A stretch of DNA of 64,000 nt, taken from sequence record ON529855.1. One strand, given 5' to 3'. Positions 5,938 to 42,930 of the stretch are shown here, piece after piece. Position 1 is the stretch's first letter; the number at the start of each line of letters is the position of its first letter. The translations under genes and the position numbers were made by a program. The notes below the pieces were generated by a model that searched no databases, was not told the DNA's origin, and was given only the letters and a program-made list of their open reading frames with translations.

Positions 5938-6236
5938 TGGCGAACCTGGACGCCGAGGTCGCACGCCTGCCGCCTCGGCTCCAGGCGGCGCACGCCCAGG
6001 GTTACATGGTGACCGATGACCTGGAAGGATTCCCGATCGACAACGCGATGCGCTTCCGGGTCCAGGTCTTCTCCCCGCGTTACGGCTGGGTCAACGCCTG
6101 GAGCACGAAGGGCGAGTTGCACGCCGATACGCCCGACCGCCTGATCAGCATCTGCAACACCCTGGCCGCCCACGGCGACCGGGTCCGAATCATCGAACTT
6201 GTTCCCTCTCTTTACAGGACTTTCGAGCCAGAATGA
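5937..6236 (+). CDS. hypothetical protein
   Basis: TGATG coupling to upstream gene. Confidence 0.7.
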   Translation: MANLDAEVARLPPRLQAAHAQGYMVTDDLEGFPIDNAMRFRVQVFSPRYGWVNAWSTKGELHADTPDRLISICNTLAAHGDRVRIIELVPSLYRTFEPE

Positions 6237-6523
6237 CCCGTTTTACCGCCCGGATCGACGCCGAGTTCGACGTCGAGATTGATGAGAGCAAGGTCACGGC
6301 CGAGGTGCTGGAAGAGTTCAGCGCCTACATCACCTATGTCGGCAACGTCGAGGACCTGGTCGAGTACCTGGCGAACCTCTACGCGCGCGGCGTCATCGAC
6401 GGCTCCGACCGGATGATCGAGGGCCTGGGTCTTCCGTCCGCCTTCGGCCTGAAGTTCATCGGGGCGCACGGCGCCACGGATTTCGGCATGGTCAACGTCA
6501 ATGTCGACATCGAGCGGGCCTGA
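6233..6523 (+). CDS. hypothetical acidic protein
   Basis: ATGA coupling; phage codon usage. Confidence 0.7.
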   Translation: MTRFTARIDAEFDVEIDESKVTAEVLEEFSAYITYVGNVEDLVEYLANLYARGVIDGSDRMIEGLGLPSAFGLKFIGAHGATDFGMVNVNVDIERA

Positions 6524-36314: not shown

Positions 36315-36733
36315 CCTCCCGCACCGCGTGGCAAAAAGAGGTCGACGACCTGTTCTGGGGCGGCGAGCCGTTCGCCGCCCGCCAGCGCCGGGTCGAGACT
36401 GAACGCCGCGAGCGGTGGTCCCAGGAAGTGCGCATCAATCCGTCGGCCGAGGTCTTGGTCGGGCTGTGCCGTAAAGCGCGGTCGCAGGGTCTGCGCGGCA
36501 TGTTGCACCAGGGCGACCTCTACTGGTGGCAGGCCTATTACGCCACGCACCACGACGTCCTTCACTGGATGGCGATCCCCGGCAACAAACTGGCGACCGG
36601 CGTGGAGTTGCACGTCTTCGATGACGGAGCCGTCGGCCTGACCACGTTCGACCGGACGACCTTCGAGGCGTGCTTGATCCATCCGAGTCTGATCGGCCGG
36701 ATCGACGCTGAAGGCGTGCTGATCAGCCGCTGA
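36311..36733 (+). CDS. hypothetical protein
   Basis: GTGA coupling. Confidence 0.65.
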   Translation: MTSRTAWQKEVDDLFWGGEPFAARQRRVETERRERWSQEVRINPSAEVLVGLCRKARSQGLRGMLHQGDLYWWQAYYATHHDVLHWMAIPGNKLATGVELHVFDDGAVGLTTFDRTTFEACLIHPSLIGRIDAEGVLISR

Positions 36734-36814
36734 CAGGCGCCGGCGTTTTCGGCGCCGCAACAAAACTGTGATAGGGGCGTTGGTCAGGTTGTAGTTTTTG
36801 CCTTCAGGACCCCT

Positions 36815-37144
36815 ATGCATACCCGACAACCCGAAGAGTTCGCCCGAATCCTCGACGAGGCGGCCGAGCATATCGCACGCCAACCCATCCATCCCGGCCA
36901 ATCCCTGCCGGGGTTATGGAACCTGGACGACGATTCGCACGAGCCGGCGCGCCTGATCGGCGTCATCGTGGCCTCGGCCCTGGCCCAGGTCTGCAAGACC
37001 GGCGATTGCGACCTGCAAGAGGCGCTCGCCAGCTATGCGGCGGTCTCTCACAACATCCCCCTGGTCGCCAAGGGCGGTCCGGACGTGATCGCGGCGCAGA
37101 ACCTGCGCGACGCCGCCCGGACCCTGCGCGAAGCGCGCCATTGA
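36815..37144 (+). CDS. hypothetical protein
   Basis: AGGA RBS; 109 aa. Confidence 0.7.
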   Translation: MHTRQPEEFARILDEAAEHIARQPIHPGQSLPGLWNLDDDSHEPARLIGVIVASALAQVCKTGDCDLQEALASYAAVSHNIPLVAKGGPDVIAAQNLRDAARTLREARH

Positions 37145-37147
37145 CGC

Positions 37148-37183
37148 AAAAAGGCCCGTCGCTGTCGAGCGCCGGGCCTTTAA
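37148..37183. terminator. probable bidirectional terminator
   Basis: AAAAAGGCCCG...CGGGCCTTTAA between convergent protein and RNA genes. Confidence 0.65.
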
Positions 37184-37186
37184 TGT

Positions 37187-37273
37187 TGGAGGTGCGACCT
37201 GGACTCGAACCAGGATGAGGGTTTCCCCTACGGCTTATGAGGCCGCTGCCTATTCCAGCCGCGCCACCGCACC
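37187..37273 (-). tRNA. tRNA with CAT anticodon, long variable arm and U73 (Met/Ile2 identity uncertain)
   Basis: GGTGCGG acceptor stem; GCGGC-CTCATAA-GCCGT; V-arm AGGG-GAAA-CCCT; CCTGG-TTCGAGT-CCAGG; encoded TCCA end. Confidence 0.85.
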
Positions 37274-37284
37274 AAAAAGAAGTC

Positions 37285-37363
37285 CAGGCGTGCTCCCGTT
37301 ACACTAAACCGGCGAGGGTCATGACCCTCGGGCGCCGGCTGCGGGATCGAACCGCTCTACCTG
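37285..37363 (-). ncRNA. circularly permuted tRNA-like element
   Basis: Order T-arm (GCGG-TTCGATC-CCGC), acceptor-like stem GCCGGCG/CGCCGGT capped by a hairpin, D-arm (GTGT-AACGGGA-GCAC); closed by CAGG/CCTG. Confidence 0.7.
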
Positions 37364-37367
37364 TGTA

Positions 37368-37436
37368 TCCGCTGTCCGCGCCACGCCAGCGTCCGCCGCT
37401 AAGCGGGCGCCTGGAGAGTCGAACTCCGACAACGAA
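37368..37436 (-). ncRNA. second permuted tRNA-like element
   Basis: 9-bp closing stem TTCGTTGTC/GACAGCGGA, T-arm GGAG-TTCGACT-CTCC, capped acceptor-like stem; D-arm degenerate. Confidence 0.55.
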
Positions 37437-37504
37437 GATTCGGACCAGCCCGTCGGCCGGTCCACGAACGCCGCGACGCCGAGGGAGGCGTCGGGGCGGT
37501 CGAA

Positions 37505-37582
37505 TGGGAGCGGGGACACGATTCGAACGTGCGATCTCTTGGTTATGAGCCAAGAATGTTGACCGGGCTACACTACCCCGCG
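37505..37582 (-). tRNA. tRNA-Met (CAT), initiator-like
   Basis: 5' CGCGGGG with 1:72 mismatch, CTTGG-CTCATAA-CCAAG, T-loop TTCGAAT, encoded CCA. Confidence 0.9.
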
Positions 37583-37593
37583 ACTCTTAGGCG

Positions 37594-37894
37594 CCAGTTC
37601 CGACGGCAGTGCGCCGGCTGGTACTCAACGGGCTCCTCCGCCGACCCTGCGCCAGGAACCATGGCGGGCACAGGATCAAGACGGAGGCGTTGCTTTACAC
37701 CCACCTTGGACGTCGGACCCGTCGGGCCGACGAAACTTTGACCAGGGGTTGTGGGACGAGTAATCCCGCCCTCTGGCCCGGCGGACTACTAGGCCTGCCC
37801 TTGCCTGGGCTCCCCCAGGCGTCCGGCACGACTTTTGGTCAACCAACCTTTACTCACGAAGACGGACGTAGCACCCGGCGTGGATCGGAACTGG
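37594..37894 (-). ncRNA. unidentified structured RNA (about 300 nt)
   Basis: 10-bp terminal stem CCAGTTCCGA/TCGGAACTGG, nested CGCCGG/CCGGCG and TTGACCA/TGGTCAA stems, internal hairpins; no credible ORF. Confidence 0.55.
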
Positions 37895-37974
37895 TAGGCC
37901 CCTCTCCTGAACGGGCCGCCGTGCTCTGGCGGGGGTCCGTCGTCATCGCCGCCGGCGTCCGCCTGCGAGAGTAA

Positions 37975-38312
37975 AGTGGGGAACTTTCTGTTCCAAGGCC
38001 CGGCAAGCCGGGGTTCCCCATACCCGTGGTCGCCCTTAGGCGGCCAGGAGGACTCGTTCGCCAGCGGCGAAGTTGTCGTTGGAAGCTTCGACAGTTGTCA
38101 AAGTTGGATCGTGAGCGGCCGAAACCGCCATGCAGACCCTAGCACTCGCCATTCAATCCCGTCACCAACGTCAATCGATACTGTTCGGCCCCTCAAACCG
38201 CGCCCGTCTCCCATCATAGGAGGGGGATTGGTGGAGCCGACGGGATTCGCACCCGTGTCTTGCCCGTCTGTTTCGTTCTCTCTGCTTCGGACCGAAGTCC
38301 TCCGCGCGACGA
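37975..38312 (-). ncRNA. ssrA: tmRNA, circularly permuted two-piece form
   Basis: Acceptor piece ends CGGCTCC-A-CCA at 38229; 36-nt spacer; coding piece starts GGGGCCG at 38192 (G3:U70); tag frame ...SNDNFAAGERVLLAA-stop (38036-38083); outer ends approximate. Confidence 0.9.
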
Positions 38313-38318
38313 AATGCC

Positions 38319-38347
38319 TGTATACAGAGTCCGTTTTGGAGTGTCAA
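38319..38347 (-). promoter_or_regulatory. sigma70 promoter of tmRNA
   Basis: TTGACA-N17-TATACA immediately upstream of the acceptor piece. Confidence 0.75.
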
Positions 38348-38366
38348 GGATTACGTCAAAGATTTT

Positions 38367-38453
38367 TGGAGGGACGGGTGAGAATCGAACTCACGCCAGG
38401 CTTTCGCCAGGAGGATTTGCAGTCCCCCGCCTTACCACTCGGTCCACCGTCCC
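38367..38453 (-). tRNA. tRNA-Cys (GCA) with long variable arm
   Basis: GGGACGG/CCGTCCC acceptor, GGGGA-CTGCAAA-TCCTC, V-arm GGC-GAAA-GCC, T-loop TTCGATT, U73 and CCA. Confidence 0.9.
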
Positions 38454-38463
38454 CTGGCATCGA

Positions 38464-38598
38464 TCTGGAAAGGGGTACCCGCCCGTGCCCGCCGCAGGTC
38501 CCGTGGTCGGTCCCGGCGGCGTCAGGGTTTCACGGCCCCAGGTCGACCCGCTCCCGTGATAGAGGGCGATACGCTGCGGGCGGGCTCGCCTTTCCAGA
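38464..38598 (-). ncRNA. unidentified stem-loop RNA (about 135 nt)
   Basis: Terminal stems TCTGGAAAGG/CCTTTCCAGA and CCCGCCCG/CGGGCGGG; lies between promoter and tRNA-Cys. Confidence 0.5.
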
Positions 38599-38658
38599 CG
38601 AAAAGGACCGCCCTGTTGCACTCCCCGGAGGGATCGTGTGACGGCCCGTGACCCTCGT

Positions 38659-38687
38659 CTTATAGCGGAAGCGGTCGGGGCAGGCAA
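38659..38687 (-). promoter_or_regulatory. sigma70 promoter for RNA cluster
   Basis: TTGCCT-N17-TATAAG (GCTATAAG, Caulobacter-style -10). Confidence 0.65.
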
Positions 38688-38832
38688 GTTCGAAAACGCG
38701 CGGGTGTCAAAAATCTCGGCACTTCGTCAGGATTCTGCCGCTAAAATGTCGATTGAACTTTATGTTAAGTCGTGCTAAGGTCCTCATGCAGTCGTCAGCA
38801 ACAGACTGCGTCCTGCCAACGGAGACATACAG

Positions 38833-39570
38833 ATGCTGCACAGTGTTCATGGTACGGTTCCTAAGCTTAAACGATGGTGCGGCCCCTCCGCCATCTCCAT
38901 CATTACAGGCCAGCCCTATCACCACGCTTTGGCGTTGCTTAAGGACGTCAAGGCCGCCAGACGAACCTACCGCGTAACGAAGGCGCCGATTGTCAAGGGC
39001 GCGTCATCGCCTAGCGTGCGCGCCGTTCTGAAGAGCCTGGGTTATCTGACGACGCAGCGGGTGACGCCGGCAGGGATCACCGTCGCGGCCTGGCTGGCGG
39101 CGCGTCCTCCCGCCGACCAGTTCACCACCTTCCTGATCGTGGCGGCCAACCACTGGATGGTGGTGCGCGGCGACGAGGCCTGCTGCGGCATTCTCGGGAC
39201 GCCGACGCCGGTCGAGCGCATGAAGTTCCGACGCGGCGTCGTCACCGAATGCTGGGTCGTCACGCCGTCCTCGCAGGGCGTGGCCCCGATCGTGACCGAG
39301 GCGCGCAAGCCGTCCGCTCGGGCAGCGTCCTCCTGGGACCGCAGCGAGGCGCGCGACCGCCGCGCCTTCGTCAAGCTGGCGCGCCAGCACGCGTTCACCT
39401 ACGACATCGTCCGGGATTGCGACACGATCCGCTACATGGAGATCGCGCCCTGCGCCGTCTTCCCCAAGGGGCTGGACACCCTGCACCATGACTGGGCGGA
39501 AACCCTGGATCGGGTCCGGCATTGCCTCGATCACCCCGAGGACGCCGCCTCGGGCAGCTACGGCCGCTGA
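38833..39570 (+). CDS. hypothetical protein, papain/C39-like Cys-His pattern
   Basis: GGAGA RBS; WCGPSAISIITG and NHWMVV; own promoter-like site and terminator. Confidence 0.75.
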   Translation: MLHSVHGTVPKLKRWCGPSAISIITGQPYHHALALLKDVKAARRTYRVTKAPIVKGASSPSVRAVLKSLGYLTTQRVTPAGITVAAWLAARPPADQFTTFLIVAANHWMVVRGDEACCGILGTPTPVERMKFRRGVVTECWVVTPSSQGVAPIVTEARKPSARAASSWDRSEARDRRAFVKLARQHAFTYDIVRDCDTIRYMEIAPCAVFPKGLDTLHHDWAETLDRVRHCLDHPEDAASGSYGR

Positions 39571-39574
39571 ACGC

Positions 39575-39610
39575 AAGAGCCCCGACCGATCACTCGGTCG
39601 GGGCTTTTTC
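39575..39610 (+). terminator. intrinsic terminator
   Basis: AAGAGCCCCGACCGA-TCAC-TCGGTCGGGGCTTTTT. Confidence 0.85.
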
Positions 39611-40560
39611 TCGCGCCATCGTCTGTGTCTCGGCCGGCGCAGCGTCAGAAGGGTGTGTCGCGAGACCTCCGTCGCGGTCCCAGGGCACTGGGGCTCCCTG
39701 GAACAAACCTCACCTGAACGTGGCTTTCCTCCCCAAGGGGCTGAAGGTGGCGGGGTCCAGGCGACCCTGTGGGGCTCACACGGCAAGGCCTCTTCTCAAT
39801 GCCAGGCATAGAAGTAGGCAGAGAGCATAGGTTCTTCCTACCCTCGTCATTGTCGTGGTCCGTTTTCCGTCTATCACAGCCTCTGGCTGCCGTCACGCCT
39901 GGTTCCCATTTCTAGGACGGCGTTCCCCTCAGAAGACGGGTCCTGGTAGACCGCGTGTGGCTCTTCAGCGCCTGACGGAACTCGACGACGTGGTTGCCGG
40001 CCGTCTGAACTAGCGTCCCCAAGCGCCCCCATGGACATGCCGTAGGGGTGTGGCAGGGTCCGCCCCACGCTGTGTCAGGATATACGACAATGAAGAGGGG
40101 GAGGTCAATACCGCCTCTGGCGGCCGTCACGCCTAATCGTTCGTCTCGGGCGGCGTTCCCGTCAGGCCTGATTGTCCCCGGCCGAGGTTTGTTCGGGGGA
40201 GCGGTGCGGTCAATCACCCCGACTCACGTTCTCTCGTAACCCGACAGCACGGGCTTAAGCGCGCACGAGCGCTGTGATACAGTCACGCGGTGGTCGACCT
40301 ATGGTGAGGTCATCGAGCCCAGTCGCGCAATCCCACCCTGTATGACGGGATTCATGGCTATCGTCAAGGGGTAACGGGCGCTCTCTCCCGGTCACGCCTC
40401 GTCCTGATGTCTCAGCCGGCGTTCGCTTCAGACAGTACGGCAATCTCGGGGCCGTCCCACGCTCCCGCTGTCGTCGGGCCTGTTCCCAGAGGAAGGTCTA
40501 CTCCAGGGCAGTCTGCTCCAGAGGCCAGGTCAGGGCGAACCCTGTGTGCTGCGCCTAAGG
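39600..40560 (-). ncRNA. array of four homologous unidentified structured RNA units
   Basis: Conserved core CTGA-N3-(GAA)CGCCG-NN-YRAG-A-N8-11-GGCGYGA at 39611-39648, 39893-39932, 40127-40165 and 40392-40431; long closing stems; no credible ORF. Confidence 0.65.
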
Positions 40561-40607
40561 ACCTTCAGCAAGATTGAAGCCTACCAGAACAAACCGAAAC
40601 GGGCAAA

Positions 40608-40640
40608 GAAAAACGGCCCCGATCCGAAGATCGGGGCCGC
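40608..40640 (-). terminator. terminator downstream of Ro60
   Basis: GCGGCCCCGATC-TTCG-GATCGGGGCCG-TTTTTCTTT on minus strand. Confidence 0.8.
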
Positions 40641-40697
40641 ATCGTTCTTTACGCGACAGCGTAATTCCGCGAACGGATTACGAATACCCGTATTGGA

Positions 40698-42083
40698 TCA
40701 GCCGCCGACGAGGCCGTCGTCGAACTCCATCGCCTCGACCTCACGGATATAGCGCAGGACGCTCTCCGAGAAGCCGTCGATGTGGACCCATCCGTTGCCG
40801 TAGCCGATGCCATGCGCATAGCTGGCGACGTTGATCATATAGGCCTTGCCGGCCTTGGGCGCCGGCAGTCGCCCGCCGCCCATGCCGCTGCTCAGCGTTC
40901 CCGACGCCTGTTCGTCGGTGATGACGATCAGGCGGTCGCAGGCGAACTGACGGTTCACCACGTCCACGGCCTGGGCCAGGGCGGTGCCCTGGTGCGGCTG
41001 CGAACGGATCACCGCCTCGACGCCCGCCATGCCCTTGCGGGCCGGGACCTCGACCAGACCGTTGGAGAAGGTCACGACGCGCACGTCGCCCGGCAGGATC
41101 GCCGCCAGCGTCGCCGCCGCATCCATCCGGGTCAGGTCCGACTTTCCGGACAGTTTTTGCCGCATGGAGTAGGAGACGTCGACCATGACCACGGTCGAAC
41201 CCTTCAAGGGTTCGGCCTGATCAATCGTCGCCACGAGGGCGTCGTCCAGCGCCCGCTCGAACGAGGGCGCATAACGCGCCGCCGCCGTGAAGCGGAAGGG
41301 CAGGACGCGGTCCGCGCCCTTGCGCGCGCGGATCGCAGCATTGACCAGATCGCGGTCGACGCCGGCCTGATCCATGTTGCGCAGGTTGCGCAGCAGGGCG
41401 AGGTAGCCCAGCTTGCCGTCGGCCAGCAGACGCGTGAACGTCGCCTTCTTGTCGGCGCCGCCCGACAGGGCGACTTCCCAGGTGTCGGGCGCCGTCAGTT
41501 CATTGTCGACCAGCTTCTTGTAGAGGGCCTCGCGGTCGTCGTTCGCCGGCTTGGCGTGCGCCAGGAACAGAACGTCGCGCAGGCGCACGGACTTGGCCCG
41601 GTCGTACTTGGCGATCTGATAGGCGTCGAAGTTGCCGAAGGCCAGCGACAGCCCCTTCTTCACCTGAGCGGACAGCGGCGCCTTCTTGCCGTCGGCGCGC
41701 ACCGGGTTGAGCGCCCAGTAGAGGGCCAGGAACTCGCTCAGTTCATCGGCGCGTTGGATGACGCGGGCGATGGTCAGCGACACCAGGGCCGAGCCGGACC
41801 CGCGTTGGGCCAGAACGACGAGCAGCAGAAGGGGGACGTGACGCAGCTTGGCGTCCTCACGCGCTTCAATCGCGATCTGGGCGAGGGTCTCGACCGGAAC
41901 TTCCTTGGCGAGGCTCTGGATACGGTCGGCGATCGACACGCCGCTCTCGTAGAAATTGTCTTCCCACAGCAGGCAGGACATGACCGACCGGCGCAGGGCC
42001 TGGGTCTTGGTCATCCGATCGGCCGGTGCGCCTTCATGGGTGCGCGCGGTGGTCGTCTTGGGCTTTGCGTTGATCGACGCCAT
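40698..42083 (-). CDS. rsr: Ro60 / TROVE-vWA RNA-binding protein
   Basis: TROVE motifs (CLLWEDNFYE, R...KLRHVP, YQIAKY, TWE..LS, ALLRNLRN, VLPFRF) and vWA MIDAS VDVSYSM...VITDEQ; GAGGAG RBS before ATG 42083. Confidence 0.95.
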   Translation of the reverse strand: MASINAKPKTTTARTHEGAPADRMTKTQALRRSVMSCLLWEDNFYESGVSIADRIQSLAKEVPVETLAQIAIEAREDAKLRHVPLLLLVVLAQRGSGSALVSLTIARVIQRADELSEFLALYWALNPVRADGKKAPLSAQVKKGLSLAFGNFDAYQIAKYDRAKSVRLRDVLFLAHAKPANDDREALYKKLVDNELTAPDTWEVALSGGADKKATFTRLLADGKLGYLALLRNLRNMDQAGVDRDLVNAAIRARKGADRVLPFRFTAAARYAPSFERALDDALVATIDQAEPLKGSTVVMVDVSYSMRQKLSGKSDLTRMDAAATLAAILPGDVRVVTFSNGLVEVPARKGMAGVEAVIRSQPHQGTALAQAVDVVNRQFACDRLIVITDEQASGTLSSGMGGGRLPAPKAGKAYMINVASYAHGIGYGNGWVHIDGFSESVLRYIREVEAMEFDDGLVGG

Positions 42084-42111
42084 AATGGGTCCCCTCCTCG
42101 TCTGGTCAAGC

Positions 42112-42279
42112 GACCAAGAGGTCGGGGAGGAACAAGCACGAGCCCGGTTCATCCGGTGCGTCTACCACTTCCGCCACCTGCACCAGAGATGCAGGCCAGG
42201 ACTTGAACCTGGATACCCTTGACGGGCGCCGGCTCCAGCGAAGTATAGGCTCGTTACGCCATCCCCGACCTCGCGGTCA
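42112..42279 (-). ncRNA. Y RNA (YrlA-like) 1, tRNA-Leu-derived permuted module
   Basis: Long terminal stem; V-arm, T-arm CCAGG-TTCAAGT-CCTGG, capped acceptor CCTGCA/TGCAGG, Leu-like D-arm GCGGAAGTGGTAGACGC. Confidence 0.85.
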
Positions 42280-42285
42280 GTGAAC

Positions 42286-42428
42286 TCCGGCGCTCTGGTA
42301 GGAAGGCGGGGGAACATGCGCGACCGGATGCGGGATCGAACCGCGAGACCGGGGGTTTGAATCCCGGCTTATCAACCAGCGATGTAACCGACCGCTCTCA
42401 CCACCCGCCCACCAACCAGGGCGCCGGA
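42286..42428 (-). ncRNA. Y RNA-like 2, non-permuted tRNA-like module with TCA loop
   Basis: Terminal stem TCCGGCGC/GCGCCGGA; same TGGTG / TGTTCC motif; D-arm, GGG-ATTCAAA-CCC, T-arm in normal order. Confidence 0.7.
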
Positions 42429-42436
42429 AAAGCAGA

Positions 42437-42591
42437 AACATGAAGGCGGCGGGGGAATAAGCGACCCCACTCTTTTTTAGGCGTGCTACCGTTACACCAA
42501 ACGCCGCTAGGCGACGTTGCGGAATCGAACCGCTCATCCCGCTCCACATGCGATGAAAGTGACGTCTATCGCCACCCACCGCCTTCATGTT
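42437..42591 (-). ncRNA. Y RNA (YrlA-like) 3
   Basis: 13-bp terminal stem AACATGAAGGCGG/CCGCCTTCATGTT; T-arm GCGG-TTCGATT-CCGC, capped acceptor CGTCGC/GCGGCG, D-arm GTGT-AACGGTA-GCAC. Confidence 0.85.
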
Positions 42592-42599
42592 GTTGGCTC

Positions 42600-42774
42600 A
42601 GAAGCGTGTGGTGGATCGACAGGGGAACCGGCGGAAAGGCGCCGTTTGGACTATCGTTCTACCAACTGAACTACCGCCGCGCCCGAAGGTGCGCCGAGTG
42701 GGATTCGAACCCACGACCTACAGTTTGCGAAGAAGGCCTCTCCCTCACCACCTGTCGATCCGCCACACGCTTCT
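42600..42774 (-). ncRNA. Y RNA (YrlA-like) 4
   Basis: 24-bp terminal stem; ACTGT-AGGTC, T-arm GTGGG-TTCGAAT-CCCAC, capped acceptor, D-arm GTTC-AGTTGGTA-GAAC, ATAGT: a tRNA opened at the anticodon loop. Confidence 0.88.
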
Positions 42775-42780
42775 CAACCC

Positions 42781-42930
42781 TGTCCTAGACAGACCCGAGG
42801 ACCCAACCCCGGACGAGGAACCGAAGTTCCCCGGCGGGATCAGGATCGTCCGGGAATAGGCGGAACCGAGAGCGGGGCCAAGGCCCCCACGTACCAAAAA
42901 CGAAGAACTCGGTCCCTGTCGCCACGGACA
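42781..42930 (-). ncRNA. structured leader RNA upstream of the Y RNA array
   Basis: TGTCC/GGACA and GACAG/CTGTC outer stems; 9-bp GGGACCGAG/CTCGGTTCC and CCCGGACGA/TCGTCCGGG; UUCG hairpin. Confidence 0.5.

What the first reader, a model, noticed from the sequence alone, without database searches (positions are those of the whole stretch)
39600..40560. Four tandem copies of an unrecognised 200-260 nt structured RNA downstream of Ro60
Seen: about 950 bp without a credible ORF. On the minus strand four cores align: CTGACGCTG-CGCCGGCCGAGACACAGACGATGGCGCGA (39611-39648), CTGAGGGGAACGCCGTCCTAGAAATGGGAACCAGGCGTGA (39893-39932), CTGACGGGAACGCCGCCCGAGACGAACGATTAGGCGTGA (40127-40165) and CTGAAGCGAACGCCGGCTGAGACATCAGGACGAGGCGTGA (40392-40431). 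They recur at 282, 234 and 265 bp spacing. Units also share a 5' GYG-loop-CAC-A-hairpin motif, and two share a 3' GCCAGAG before the closing stem. Long-range closing stems differ in sequence (39840-39856 with 40084-40100; 40103-40114 with 40287-40300). The CGCC/GGCG stem flanked by GA...GA resembles a kink-turn. Inference: a diverged, structure-conserved ncRNA family (ribozyme, protein sponge or additional Ro60 ligand) that matches no class I can recognise.
Basis: partly seen in the sequence, partly recalled or inferred. Interest (0 to 1): 0.9.

Follow-up and report, generated by a model that had tools for sequence, protein, structure and literature searches.

The report
Widespread unnamed phage RNA hairpin module
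The four repeats downstream of the phage Ro60 gene are copies of a short two-hairpin RNA module, absent from Rfam, that recurs (often in tandem) between genes and just before tRNA genes in hundreds of phages and prophages of many bacterial phyla. It is therefore a general phage RNA element of unknown biochemistry, not a Ro60-specific RNA.

Summary
The window is Brevundimonas jumbo phage vB_BpoS-Domovoi.

**Observation.** Three of the four cores are real and significant. The fourth is a degenerate copy whose second hairpin is replaced by an intrinsic terminator.

**What the core is.** It is not a 200-260 nt structured unit. It is a ~55-60 nt module: G-GGAAC, then P1 (ACGCC...GGCGU), then GAC-NN, then P2 (5-6 bp, loop GAGAGA or CAGAG).
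- Sequence patterns and two covariance models find the module in more than 120 IMG/VR contigs and in prophages of many phyla.
- Both helices covary.
- About 20% of the fetched viral loci hold tandem copies.
- Copies usually sit just after a stop codon, or 6-20 nt before a tRNA.
- Rfam 15 has no family for it.

**Link to Ro60.** It is not tied to Ro60. In Caulobacter phage CcrColossus the homologous tandem array abuts tRNA-Cys, about 24 kb from Ro60. The canonical YrlA-type Y RNAs lie upstream of Ro60 (window ~42100-42800).

**What is not supported.** The long closing stems and the GYG/CAC hairpin do not hold up in relatives. The sequence blocks between cores are 96-100% conserved within the genus but cannot be aligned outside it.

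**Best reading (inferred).** A cis-acting RNA "punctuation" module that defines or protects RNA ends. Rivals are a put-like antiterminator, a protein decoy and a DNA-level element.

The parts
40373..40432 (-). Module copy 4, the 5'-most on the transcript. Reads UCUGAAGCGA-ACGCC[19-nt loop]GGCGU-GAC-CGGG AGAGAGCG CCCG. P1 arms are 40418-40422 and 40394-40398. P2 is atypical.
   Evidence: R2 34.1 bits, E 3.5e-8; R1 64.6 bits; exact pattern match.
40107..40166 (-). Module copy 3. P1 arms are 40152-40156 and 40129-40133. P2 is GGCCGCC-AGA-GGCGGU, 40110-40125.
   Evidence: R2 46.6 bits, E 2e-11. The P2 stem covaries with the other copies.
39873..39933 (-). Module copy 2. P1 arms are 39919-39923 and 39895-39899. 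P2 is GGCAGCC-AGA-GGCUGU, 39876-39891.
   Evidence: R2 38.6 bits, E 2.4e-9; repeat family D1/D2.
39611..39656 (-). Degenerate copy 1. It has P1 only: GCGCC[GGCCGAGACACAGACGAU]GGCGC-GAG.
   Evidence: R1 17.2 bits, E 0.01; not significant with R2. It is conserved in Kabachok, Bambus and Marchewka. Gurke has an equivalent copy directly before its terminator.
39575..39608 (.). GC-rich hairpin between convergent transcription units. It takes the position of P2 of copy 1 and ends the RNA array.
   Evidence: Inverted repeat I4, 15 nt, 93% complementary. Terminator scan.
40433..40572 (-). Conserved non-coding block preceding copy 4.
   Evidence: 84-100% identical (mostly 96% or more) between Domovoi and Bambus in 25-nt windows, against 92% and 84% for the flanking CDSs. 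No homology outside the genus-level group. MFE z +1.03, for block plus core.
40167..40300 (-). Conserved non-coding block preceding copy 3.
   Evidence: 92-100% identical to Bambus from 40275 downward; its 5' edge is variable. MFE z -0.06.
39934..40102 (-). Conserved non-coding block preceding copy 2. It follows copy 3 with almost no spacer.
   Evidence: 84-100% identical to Bambus. MFE z -0.10.
39657..39812 (-). Conserved non-coding block preceding degenerate copy 1.
   Evidence: 76-100% identical to Bambus. MFE z +0.38.
40613..40640 (-). Intrinsic terminator-like hairpin plus U-tract after Ro60, upstream of the array.
   Evidence: Terminator scan: 12 pairs, followed by TTTTTCTTT. Compensatory changes in Bambus.
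40698..42083 (-). Ro60 (TROVE + vWA) gene, given as context. Coordinates follow the GenBank CDS; the longest ORF runs to 42152.
   Evidence: Pfam TROVE 9.6e-12, VWA_2 4.4e-6. GenBank annotation.

Best explanation
**Shown: what the repeats are.** The four repeats are copies of a short RNA module. The module has two hairpins, P1 and P2, joined by invariant junction nucleotides (G-GGAAC...UGAC) and a purine loop (GAGAGA or CAGAG). It is a general intergenic element of tailed phages and prophages.

**Inferred: how the region is organised.** In Domovoi the module punctuates a roughly 1-kb untranslated minus-strand stretch. That stretch lies between the Ro60 terminator and a second terminator. It appears to hold four segments of about 200-280 nt, each ending in the module. 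The last copy uses the terminator hairpin in place of P2.

**Inferred: most likely mechanism.** The module acts in cis on the transcript as a boundary element. It would mark where the RNA is cut or trimmed and leave a compact, protected 3' end on the upstream RNA. Whether the cut is made by a host nuclease or by the RNA itself is unresolved. On this reading the strongly conserved blocks between modules are the cargo: small RNAs of unknown function.

**How sure.** Membership in the widespread family is close to certain (about 0.9). The boundary mechanism is about 0.4-0.5. The confidence value given is for the mechanism.
For: **Family membership**
In 108 of 122 hits an unrequired P2 stem of at least 4 bp is present.
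- A second pattern that leaves P1 free recovers P1 variants with compensatory changes: ACGUC/GACGU, ACGAC/GUCGU, ACCAC/GUGGU. AAGCC/GGCUU appears in Gurke and L001.
- On 54 sequences, 93% of cells pair, and 82 cells change on both sides against 18 in shuffles (0 of 500 shuffles reach the observed value). Slid controls pair at 25-47%.
- Prophage copies occur in Proteobacteria, Myxococcota, Acidobacteriota, Verrucomicrobiota, Chloroflexota, Planctomycetota and others. Cultured phages of Cronobacter, E. coli, Pseudomonas, Stenotrophomonas and Planktothrix also carry it.

**Boundary role**
- Between Domovoi and Bambus, conservation ends right after P2 and the following spacers are variable.
- In other phages the module typically starts 18-50 nt after a same-strand stop codon. 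In about 25 of 110 cases the next ORF starts 4-28 nt after it.
- The nearest upstream ORF is on the same strand in 48 of 65 cases. The downstream ORF is on the same strand in only 34 of 59, so copies often lie between convergent genes.
- In 6 of 60 loci a tRNA starts within 20 nt of P2. In CcrColossus the last unit ends 11 nt before tRNA-Cys.
- Tandem same-strand copies 65-330 nt apart occur in about 20 of 100 loci. Up to four follow a major head gene.
- Copy 1 and its Gurke equivalent use the terminator as P2.
Against: - No transcript ends were observed, so everything about processing or protection is inference from position.
- The sequence is conserved across phyla whose RNases differ. A purely host-nuclease signal does not explain that well.
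- Many copies sit about 20 nt before a start codon or a tRNA. That fits a 5' leader role equally well.
- Only 14 of 87 copies have a U-run after P2, so it is not a classical terminator.
- The alignment used for covariation was pre-selected for at least 4 pairs in each helix. This inflates the percentage paired, though not the number of pair types.
- The ORF-based context statistics are noisy in GC-rich DNA.
Confidence: 0.45

Rival explanations
1. A put-like processive antiterminator. The nascent two-hairpin RNA would bind the transcribing RNA polymerase and make it resistant to pausing, to Rho and to intrinsic terminators. This would protect long untranslated operons (tRNA, tmRNA or Y RNA arrays) and late operons.
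For: - It has two hairpins in about 55-70 nt, like HK022 put (PMC9378689).
- It is conserved across phyla, as expected for a ligand of a universally conserved polymerase surface.
- Copies lie 200-450 nt downstream of a TTGACA promoter next to the repressor gene of coliphage mEp390, and upstream of the terminase operon of Cronobacter phage CS01.
- Copies directly precede untranslated tRNA arrays.
Against: - A loose motif pattern (regex) found no match around the HK022 early region.
- Many copies lie between convergent genes or at the very end of a unit, and copy 1 is fused to a terminator.
- Tandem arrays of 3-4 copies are not needed for a cis antiterminator.
- The association is stronger with the upstream gene than with the downstream gene.
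Confidence: 0.2
2. A protein decoy or sponge, which includes the reader's idea of an additional Ro60 ligand. Multiple copies of a purine-loop hairpin module would be expressed at high level and titrate a conserved RNA-binding protein.
For: - Tandem multi-copy arrays are typical.
- Some are placed after the most highly expressed late gene.
- The junction GCGAACG/GGCGAACG resembles the Y RNA motif GNCGAAN0-1G (PMC4201824). One Gurke copy matches that motif exactly.
- Two IMG/VR Ro60 loci carry a copy right after the Ro60 stop codon.
Against: - Most family members read GGGAACG, which breaks the Ro60 motif.
- The module is common in contigs with no Ro60 nearby.
- In CcrColossus and CcrPW the array is about 24 kb from Ro60.
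- The Rfam YrlA model does not match the region, even at E<=10, while it does hit upstream of Ro60.
- The Domovoi-type P2 loops lack GGA, which argues against CsrA.
- Single copies are the commonest state.
Confidence: 0.12
3. A DNA-level element, such as a promoter, an operator or another protein-binding site. On this reading the hairpins would be incidental palindromes.
For: - GTGACA resembles a -35 hexamer.
- In L001 the 3' half of the module reads TTGACA-17 nt-TATAAT, directly before a tRNA array.
- In Domovoi, Gurke and CcrColossus a TTGAC follows P2 by 5-12 nt.
Against: - The P1 loop varies from 10 to more than 36 nt, and the stems covary while their sequence drifts. That is the signature of a folded single strand, not of a duplex binding site.
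- G-U pairs occur in the stems.
- No -10-like hexamer sits at the right distance in the family as a whole.
- The element is strand-specific relative to the neighbouring genes.
Confidence: 0.06
4. One large ornate RNA of about 1 kb, similar in kind to GOLLD or ROOL, which also sit next to phage tRNA genes. The four cores would be internal pseudo-repeats.
For: - About 1 kb of non-coding sequence is more conserved than the neighbouring genes.
- It is adjacent to a tRNA/tmRNA cluster in all relatives.
- Long-range complementarities exist (I2-I3).
Against: - The module exists alone in most phages.
- Variable spacers interrupt the array exactly after P2.
- The long-range stems are not maintained in Bambus.
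- There is no excess folding energy.
- There is no Rfam hit to GOLLD or ROOL.
Confidence: 0.05

Closest known systems
Bacterial Y RNAs (YrlA, Rfam RF02553; YrlB)
   Same: - Non-coding and on the same strand as Ro60, within 4 kb of it.
- Several copies per locus.
- A CGAA-like junction (GCGAACG) next to a stem.
   Different: - There is no tRNA-like T/D domain and no 5'/3' terminal Ro-binding stem.
- The YrlA model does not match, even at E<=10.
- Most family members occur without Ro60.
- The true YrlA-like RNAs lie upstream of Ro60 in this window.
HK022 put RNA (cis-acting antiterminator)
   Same: - About 60-70 nt with two hairpins.
- Phage-encoded and presumably acting on its own transcript.
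- Some copies lie just downstream of early promoters.
   Different: - No match in HK022 itself.
- put is known from about ten enterobacterial sequences (PMC9378689), whereas this module spans many phyla.
- The module is frequently at 3' ends of units and in tandem.
T7-type RNase III processing signals and REP-like 3' stabilisers (from general knowledge)
   Same: - Intercistronic hairpin elements co-directional with the genes.
- They punctuate polycistronic phage transcripts and leave a protective 3' structure.
   Different: - Those elements are defined by shape and are clade-specific.
- This module has invariant junction and loop nucleotides conserved across phyla, and stems that are too short for RNase III.
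Hammerhead ribozyme (type I topology)
   Same: - In the Domovoi clade the order CUGA..GA-[stem]-GA.-[stem] mimics CUGANGA-stem II-GAAA-stem III.
- Tandem G-A pairs are possible at the base of P1.
- The phage intergenic lifestyle, often in tandem, is similar.
   Different: - There are three nucleotides instead of one between CUGA and GA, and the sequence reads GAC instead of GAA.
- CUGA is absent from the wider family.
- There is no Rfam hammerhead hit.
GOLLD / ROOL large RNAs
   Same: - Unexplained structured RNAs in phages and prophages, next to tRNA genes.
   Different: - Those are single RNAs of 500-800 nt with their own Rfam models, which do not match here.
- The conserved unit here is about 55 nt and is modular.

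Membership tests
YrlA / bacterial Y RNA | Match to the Rfam YrlA covariance model (RF02553) | tested here: not met
   No YrlA hit in 39571-40697, even at E<=10. The same model gives 27 bits, E 0.002 at 42652-42722, upstream of Ro60.
YrlA / bacterial Y RNA | tRNA-like domain (T arm, acceptor-like stem, D arm) | tested here: not met
   Neither ARAGORN nor the Rfam tRNA models find anything in the region.
YrlA / bacterial Y RNA | GNCGAAN0-1G motif near the 5' end, in a stem formed by the 5' and 3' ends (PMC4201824) | tested here: inconclusive
   Copy 4 reads AGCGAACG and copies 2 and 3 read GGGGAACG/CGGGAACG. Only one Gurke copy (GGCGAACG) fits exactly. The motif sits at the 3' end of each block, next to a local hairpin and not in a terminal stem.
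YrlA / bacterial Y RNA | Encoded within about 4 kb of Ro60 on the same strand, and co-occurring with Ro60 across genomes | tested here: not met
   The proximity criterion is met in the Domovoi and Gurke groups, L001 and L009. Co-occurrence fails: the CcrColossus and CcrPW arrays are about 24 kb from Ro60, and more than 100 contigs carry the module in other contexts.
Hammerhead ribozyme | Core CUGANGA ... GAAA ... with three stems; Rfam models | tested here: not met
   The sequence shows CUGA-NGN-GA and GAC. The wider family lacks CUGA. No Rfam ribozyme hit at E<=10 or E<=1.
Intrinsic (Rho-independent) terminator | GC-rich hairpin immediately followed by a U-tract | tested here: not met
   The terminator scan does not call copies 2-4. 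Only 14 of 87 family members have a run of at least 4 U within 12 nt after P2. The hairpin at 39575-39608 after copy 1 does qualify.
HK022 put antiterminator | Sequence or structure similarity to putL/putR, and a position downstream of early promoters | tested here: inconclusive
   A loose motif pattern found nothing around the HK022 early region. Position fits for the mEp390 copies but not for copies at unit ends. Activity is not testable here.
Kink-turn | Three-nucleotide bulge followed by tandem sheared G-A/A-G pairs between two helices | not testable with these tools
   GA-[A...U]-GA flanks P1 and is nearly invariant. However, no conserved partner helix or 3-nt bulge could be defined from the sequence.
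GOLLD / ROOL / other Rfam large RNAs | Match to the curated covariance models | tested here: not met
   No hit in the window at gathering thresholds, or in 36500-41500 at E<=10.

The most novel reading that the evidence does not exclude
The module is a previously undescribed class of structured RNA with a biochemical activity of its own. It would be either a small self-cleaving ribozyme or a fold that engages a universally conserved machine (RNA polymerase or an exoribonuclease). Phages of many bacterial phyla would use it to cut, end or protect their transcripts, including tRNA, Y RNA and capsid-gene transcripts.
Probability: 0.4. Interest if true: 0.85.

Novelty: new variant of a known kind. 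Interest (0 to 1): 0.7.

Why it matters
If this holds, the finding changes from a curiosity next to one Ro60 gene into a widespread RNA family that has no curated name.

- **Breadth.** The family has invariant junction nucleotides and covarying stems. It has a stereotyped place in phage genomes: gene ends, tRNA-array leaders and tandem arrays. It is found in phages of Proteobacteria, Cyanobacteria, Acidobacteriota, Myxococcota and more.
- **Tractability.** Copies exist in laboratory-tractable coliphage relatives (mEp390, Cronobacter CS01). Its activity (self-cleavage, nuclease blocking, antitermination or protein binding) can therefore be tested directly.
- **Annotation.** The module gives annotators a marker for RNA-unit boundaries in phage genomes.
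- **Correction for this locus.** The canonical Y RNAs are upstream of Ro60 and are unannotated.

Tried and rejected
- **Rfam** at gathering and permissive thresholds on the window and on 8 motif-bearing loci found nothing at the motif.
- **Y RNA reading** was rejected for the reasons given in the membership test.
- **Hammerhead reading** was rejected on core sequence.
- **Sigma-70 promoter reading.** Only L001 has a consensus -35/-10 overlapping the module. The family has no -10 at the right distance.
- **Intrinsic terminator reading.** There is no U-tract in most copies.
- **HK022 put.** No match.
- **Long closing stems and unit-wide structure.** These are not conserved in Bambus, and the blocks show no excess folding energy.
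- **Unit-level homology** between the Domovoi, Gurke and CcrColossus arrays: only the cores align.
- **BLAST of two IMG/VR contexts** against cultured phages gave no match.
- **Literature search** by sequence words and by topic found no description. A 2023 catalogue of about 10,000 unnamed viral RNA candidates (PMC10690425) may contain the module, but I could not check its models.
- **A pseudoknot** between the P1 loop (GAGUC/GUCA) and downstream ACUC or UGAC fits only a subset of sequences and was dropped.
- **CsrA sponge.** The Domovoi-type loops lack GGA.
- **One script** for shuffle z-scores timed out. The strand folding replaced it.
Full report
**Source and setting**

The window is Brevundimonas phage vB_BpoS-Domovoi (ON529855.1), a 352-kb member of the Dolichocephalovirinae. 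It is 100% identical over a 2.7-kb query.

The finding lies in an unannotated gap, 39571-40697. On one side is a + strand hypothetical CDS (38833-39570). On the other is a minus-strand gene (40698-42083) whose product has TROVE and vWA domains, that is, Ro60. Further along the minus strand lie tRNA-Cys, a permuted tmRNA and two tRNA-Met genes.

A terminator-like hairpin with a U-tract follows Ro60 (40613-40640). A second GC-rich hairpin (39575-39608) closes the gap.

**Checking the observation**

The four cores are at the stated coordinates and spacings. Three of them match a 22-nt degenerate pattern exactly, where shuffles give 0.55 matches even with three mismatches allowed. Repeat detection recovers the same three, plus the shared GCCAGAG segment.

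The fourth core (39611-39648) is much weaker. It scores 17 bits, E 0.01, with a clade-specific model and is not significant with the general model. It keeps only the first hairpin. The terminator hairpin stands where the second hairpin would be. Gurke has an equivalent arrangement at the end of its array.

Rfam 15 gives nothing in the gap, either at gathering thresholds or at E<=10.

**What is conserved**

I aligned the gap of Domovoi with Kabachok, Bambus and Marchewka. Four blocks are nearly invariant, mostly 96-100% identical between Domovoi and Bambus in 25-nt windows.
- The Ro60 CDS is 92% identical, with 81 of 112 differences at third codon positions.
- The other flanking CDS is 84% identical.

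So the gap is under nucleotide-level constraint stronger than that on the neighbouring genes.

Each conserved block ends right after the second hairpin of a core. The spacers that follow are the variable parts: identity is 0.40 in the window just before block 4 (cols 101-125), 0.60-0.84 between copies 4 and 3, and 0.56-0.72 after copy 2.

Outside this group only the cores can be aligned. Gurke and Kikimora have three copies downstream of Ro60. CcrColossus has three to four copies. Blastn with word size 7 finds nothing but the 40-90 nt cores.

They lose pairs in Bambus and Marchewka through changes on one arm only. The 5' GYG-loop-CAC hairpin of unit 3 is replaced there by CUGC-CUU-GCAG. The four blocks fold no better than dinucleotide shuffles, with z between -0.10 and +1.03. 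The conserved structural unit is therefore the core, not a 200-260 nt RNA.

**The core belongs to a large family**

The core folds as follows.
- P1 is ACGCC/GGCGU, around a loop of 10 to more than 36 nt.
- Its flanks are G-GGA on the 5' side and GAC on the 3' side.
- After two nucleotides comes P2, a 5-6 bp hairpin. Its loop is GAGAGA in most members and CAGAG or AGA in the Domovoi clade.

Evidence that this is a real and widespread family:
In 108 of 122 matches a P2 stem of at least 4 bp is present.
- The same pattern in GTDB genomes gives a mixture of chance hits (64 without P2) and 58 clear copies. These come from Pandoraea, Caballeronia, Collimonas, Aminobacter, Aquamicrobium, Myxococcales, Vicinamibacteria, Verrucomicrobiota, Chloroflexota, Phycisphaerae, a Defluviitaleaceae MAG and others, presumably in prophages.
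- A second scan that fixed only GGGAAC, TGAC and GGAGAGAC left P1 free. P1 still forms 4-5 pairs in 79 of 94 distinct hits, with compensatory variants ACGUC/GACGU, ACGAC/GUCGU and ACCAC/GUGGU. Gurke copy a and L001 have AAGCC/GGCUU.
- A related version, GCGACACCUGCC...GGUGUGAC-P2, occurs in arrays with a period of about 90 nt.

On a 54-sequence alignment, 93% of cells pair and eight of ten pairs show double changes. There are 82 double-change cells against 18 in shuffles (0 of 500 shuffles reach this). Sliding the 3' partner drops pairing to 25-47%.

One caveat applies. Sequences were chosen with at least 4 pairs per helix, so the percentage paired is inflated. The diversity of pair types is not.

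G-U pairs and strand bias relative to genes indicate a folded single strand, read in the direction of the genes. Eight motif-bearing loci gave no Rfam hit at the motif at E<=1. RefSeq annotation shows nothing at the E. coli prophage copies. Literature searches found no description. A catalogue of about 10,000 unnamed viral RNA candidates might contain the module.

**Genomic habits of the module**

With the general model R2, 100 IMG/VR loci give 120 hits at E<=0.001. About 20 loci carry two or three same-strand copies 65-330 nt apart. The tandem arrangement in Domovoi is therefore typical of the family.

Position relative to genes:
- Copies usually begin 18-50 nt after a same-strand stop codon.
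- In roughly a quarter of cases the next ORF starts 4-28 nt after P2.
- The nearest upstream ORF of at least 100 aa is co-directional in 48 of 65 cases. The nearest downstream ORF is co-directional in only 34 of 59. Many copies therefore sit at the end of a transcription unit.
- Neighbouring genes include a major head protein (followed by one to four copies), RecT, a DNA methyltransferase and ParB.
- In 6 of 60 loci a tRNA gene starts within 20 nt of P2.

Examples in cultured phages:
- Cronobacter phage CS01 has a copy upstream of the terminase operon.
- Coliphage mEp390 has copies about 200-450 nt downstream of a TTGACA promoter beside its repressor gene.
- Planktothrix, Pseudomonas and Stenotrophomonas phages also carry it. 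In these records the match falls mostly in stretches with no annotated feature.

**Relation to Ro60**

The tie to Ro60 does not survive comparison. In CcrColossus and CcrPW the homologous Domovoi-type units (CUGACGCGAACGCC...GGCGUGAC-GGGGGCC AGA GGCCC) form a tandem array. The last unit ends 11 nt before tRNA-Cys, and a further copy lies between the tRNA-Met genes. Their Ro60 gene is about 24 kb away and has no copy nearby.

In the Brevundimonas phages, Ro60, the array and the tRNA cluster happen to be contiguous. There are hints of recurrent proximity:
- L001 (Ro60 56% identical) has a copy right after the Ro60 stop codon and before a tRNA array.
- L009 has one copy after Ro60 and another before its four Y RNAs.

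I could not test whether this exceeds the background density of the module.

The canonical Ro60 partners are on the other side of the gene. Window ~42100-42800 (minus strand) holds four tandem RNAs, each with a 5' GGUGGCG(U/A)AG, a T arm, an acceptor-like hairpin, a D arm and a 3' GUUCCCC. One of them gives a sub-threshold hit to Rfam YrlA (27 bits, E 0.002). CcrColossus has about six such RNAs, one of them annotated as tRNA-Gln.

**Mechanism**

These points are shown:
- It is an RNA-level, strand-specific, two-hairpin module with invariant junction and loop nucleotides.
- It is placed at the boundaries of RNA units and is often repeated.

The following is inferred. It most likely acts in cis as punctuation. 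It would mark where a polycistronic or untranslated transcript is cut or trimmed, and leave a compact protected 3' end on the upstream RNA. That upstream RNA could be a capsid message, a small RNA block as in Domovoi, or the RNA preceding a tRNA that RNase P will release.

Four observations fit this reading:
- Conservation ends at P2.
- The association is with the upstream gene.
- Copies lie between convergent genes.
- A terminator substitutes for P2 in the last copy.

It remains open whether the cut is made by a host enzyme or by the RNA itself. Conservation across phyla and the ribozyme-like pattern (variable stems with fixed junctions) keep self-cleavage alive. However, the core is not a hammerhead, and no Rfam ribozyme model matches it.

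Rivals:
- A put-like antiterminator fits the mEp390, CS01 and tRNA-leader positions, but not copies at unit ends.
- A multi-copy protein decoy, including a Ro60 ligand, is weakened by the distribution without Ro60.
- A DNA site is contradicted by the variable loop length and the covariation.
- One large ornate RNA is contradicted by the modularity and the variable spacers.

**Verdict**

It is wrong about its size, its closing stems and its link to Ro60.

The interest lies in the family. It is widespread and sharply conserved, has no match in Rfam 15 or in the papers searched, and is experimentally accessible in coliphage relatives.

Noticed in passing
window 42090-42800 (minus strand); L026 4360-5560; L009 3500-4000; L006 3400-3900: Four tandem YrlA-like tRNA-mimic Y RNAs lie directly upstream of Ro60. 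Each has a 5' GGUGGCG(U/A)AG, a T arm, an acceptor-like hairpin, a D arm and a 3' GUUCCCC. They are unannotated in the Domovoi record. One gives a sub-threshold Rfam YrlA hit (42652-42722, 27 bits). CcrColossus has about six, one of them annotated as tRNA-Gln. The fourth Domovoi copy overlaps the longest Ro60 ORF (start 42152), which supports the GenBank start at 42083.
   Followed up: partly
window 38036-38291 (minus strand): A permuted (two-piece, alphaproteobacterial-type) tmRNA gene lies between tRNA-Cys and the tRNA-Met genes (Rfam tmRNA_permuted, 60 bits). It is not annotated in the GenBank record of the phage.
   Followed up: no
window 38367-38453 and 37187-37273 (minus strand): The phage tRNA-Cys and one tRNA-Met are 87 nt long, with a 12-13 nt insertion in the variable-arm region. 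This is unusual for these tRNA identities.
   Followed up: no
L102 (reverse strand, about 6050-6400 in reversed coordinates), L070, L054, L066: A variant of the module, GCGACACCUGCC...AGUGGUGUGAC-P2(GAGAGA), forms arrays of up to four copies with a period of about 90 nt. The arrays follow a major head protein gene in uncultured phages. The P1 change CGCC/GGCG to CACC/GGUG is compensatory.
   Followed up: partly
L001 3755-3790: In this IMG/VR phage the 3' half of the module reads TTGACA-17 nt-TATAAT, a perfect sigma-70 consensus. It lies 20 nt upstream of the first tRNA of an array and directly after the Ro60 stop codon.
   Followed up: partly
L273 (coliphage mEp390) 1100-1540: A roughly 450-nt stretch next to the repressor gene is conserved in 84 enterobacterial phage records, including Stx2c-converting phages. 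It contains two module copies. The annotated 80-aa hypothetical gp36 overlaps one copy and may not be a real gene.
   Followed up: partly
window 40340-40372 and L027 2400-2440: After P2 of copy 4, the segment CUUGAC-N12-GAAUCCCGUCA(A)UA is conserved between Domovoi, Bambus and Gurke. A TTGAC follows P2 by 5-12 nt in several Domovoi, Gurke and CcrColossus units. These could be internal promoters for the next unit.
   Followed up: no
window 38833-39570 (+ strand): A hypothetical CDS with no Pfam hit lies between the RNA array and tRNA-Cys in the Brevundimonas phages. It is missing from the corresponding stretch of CcrColossus, where the array abuts tRNA-Cys directly. This looks like an insertion that separated the array from the tRNA cluster.
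   Followed up: no
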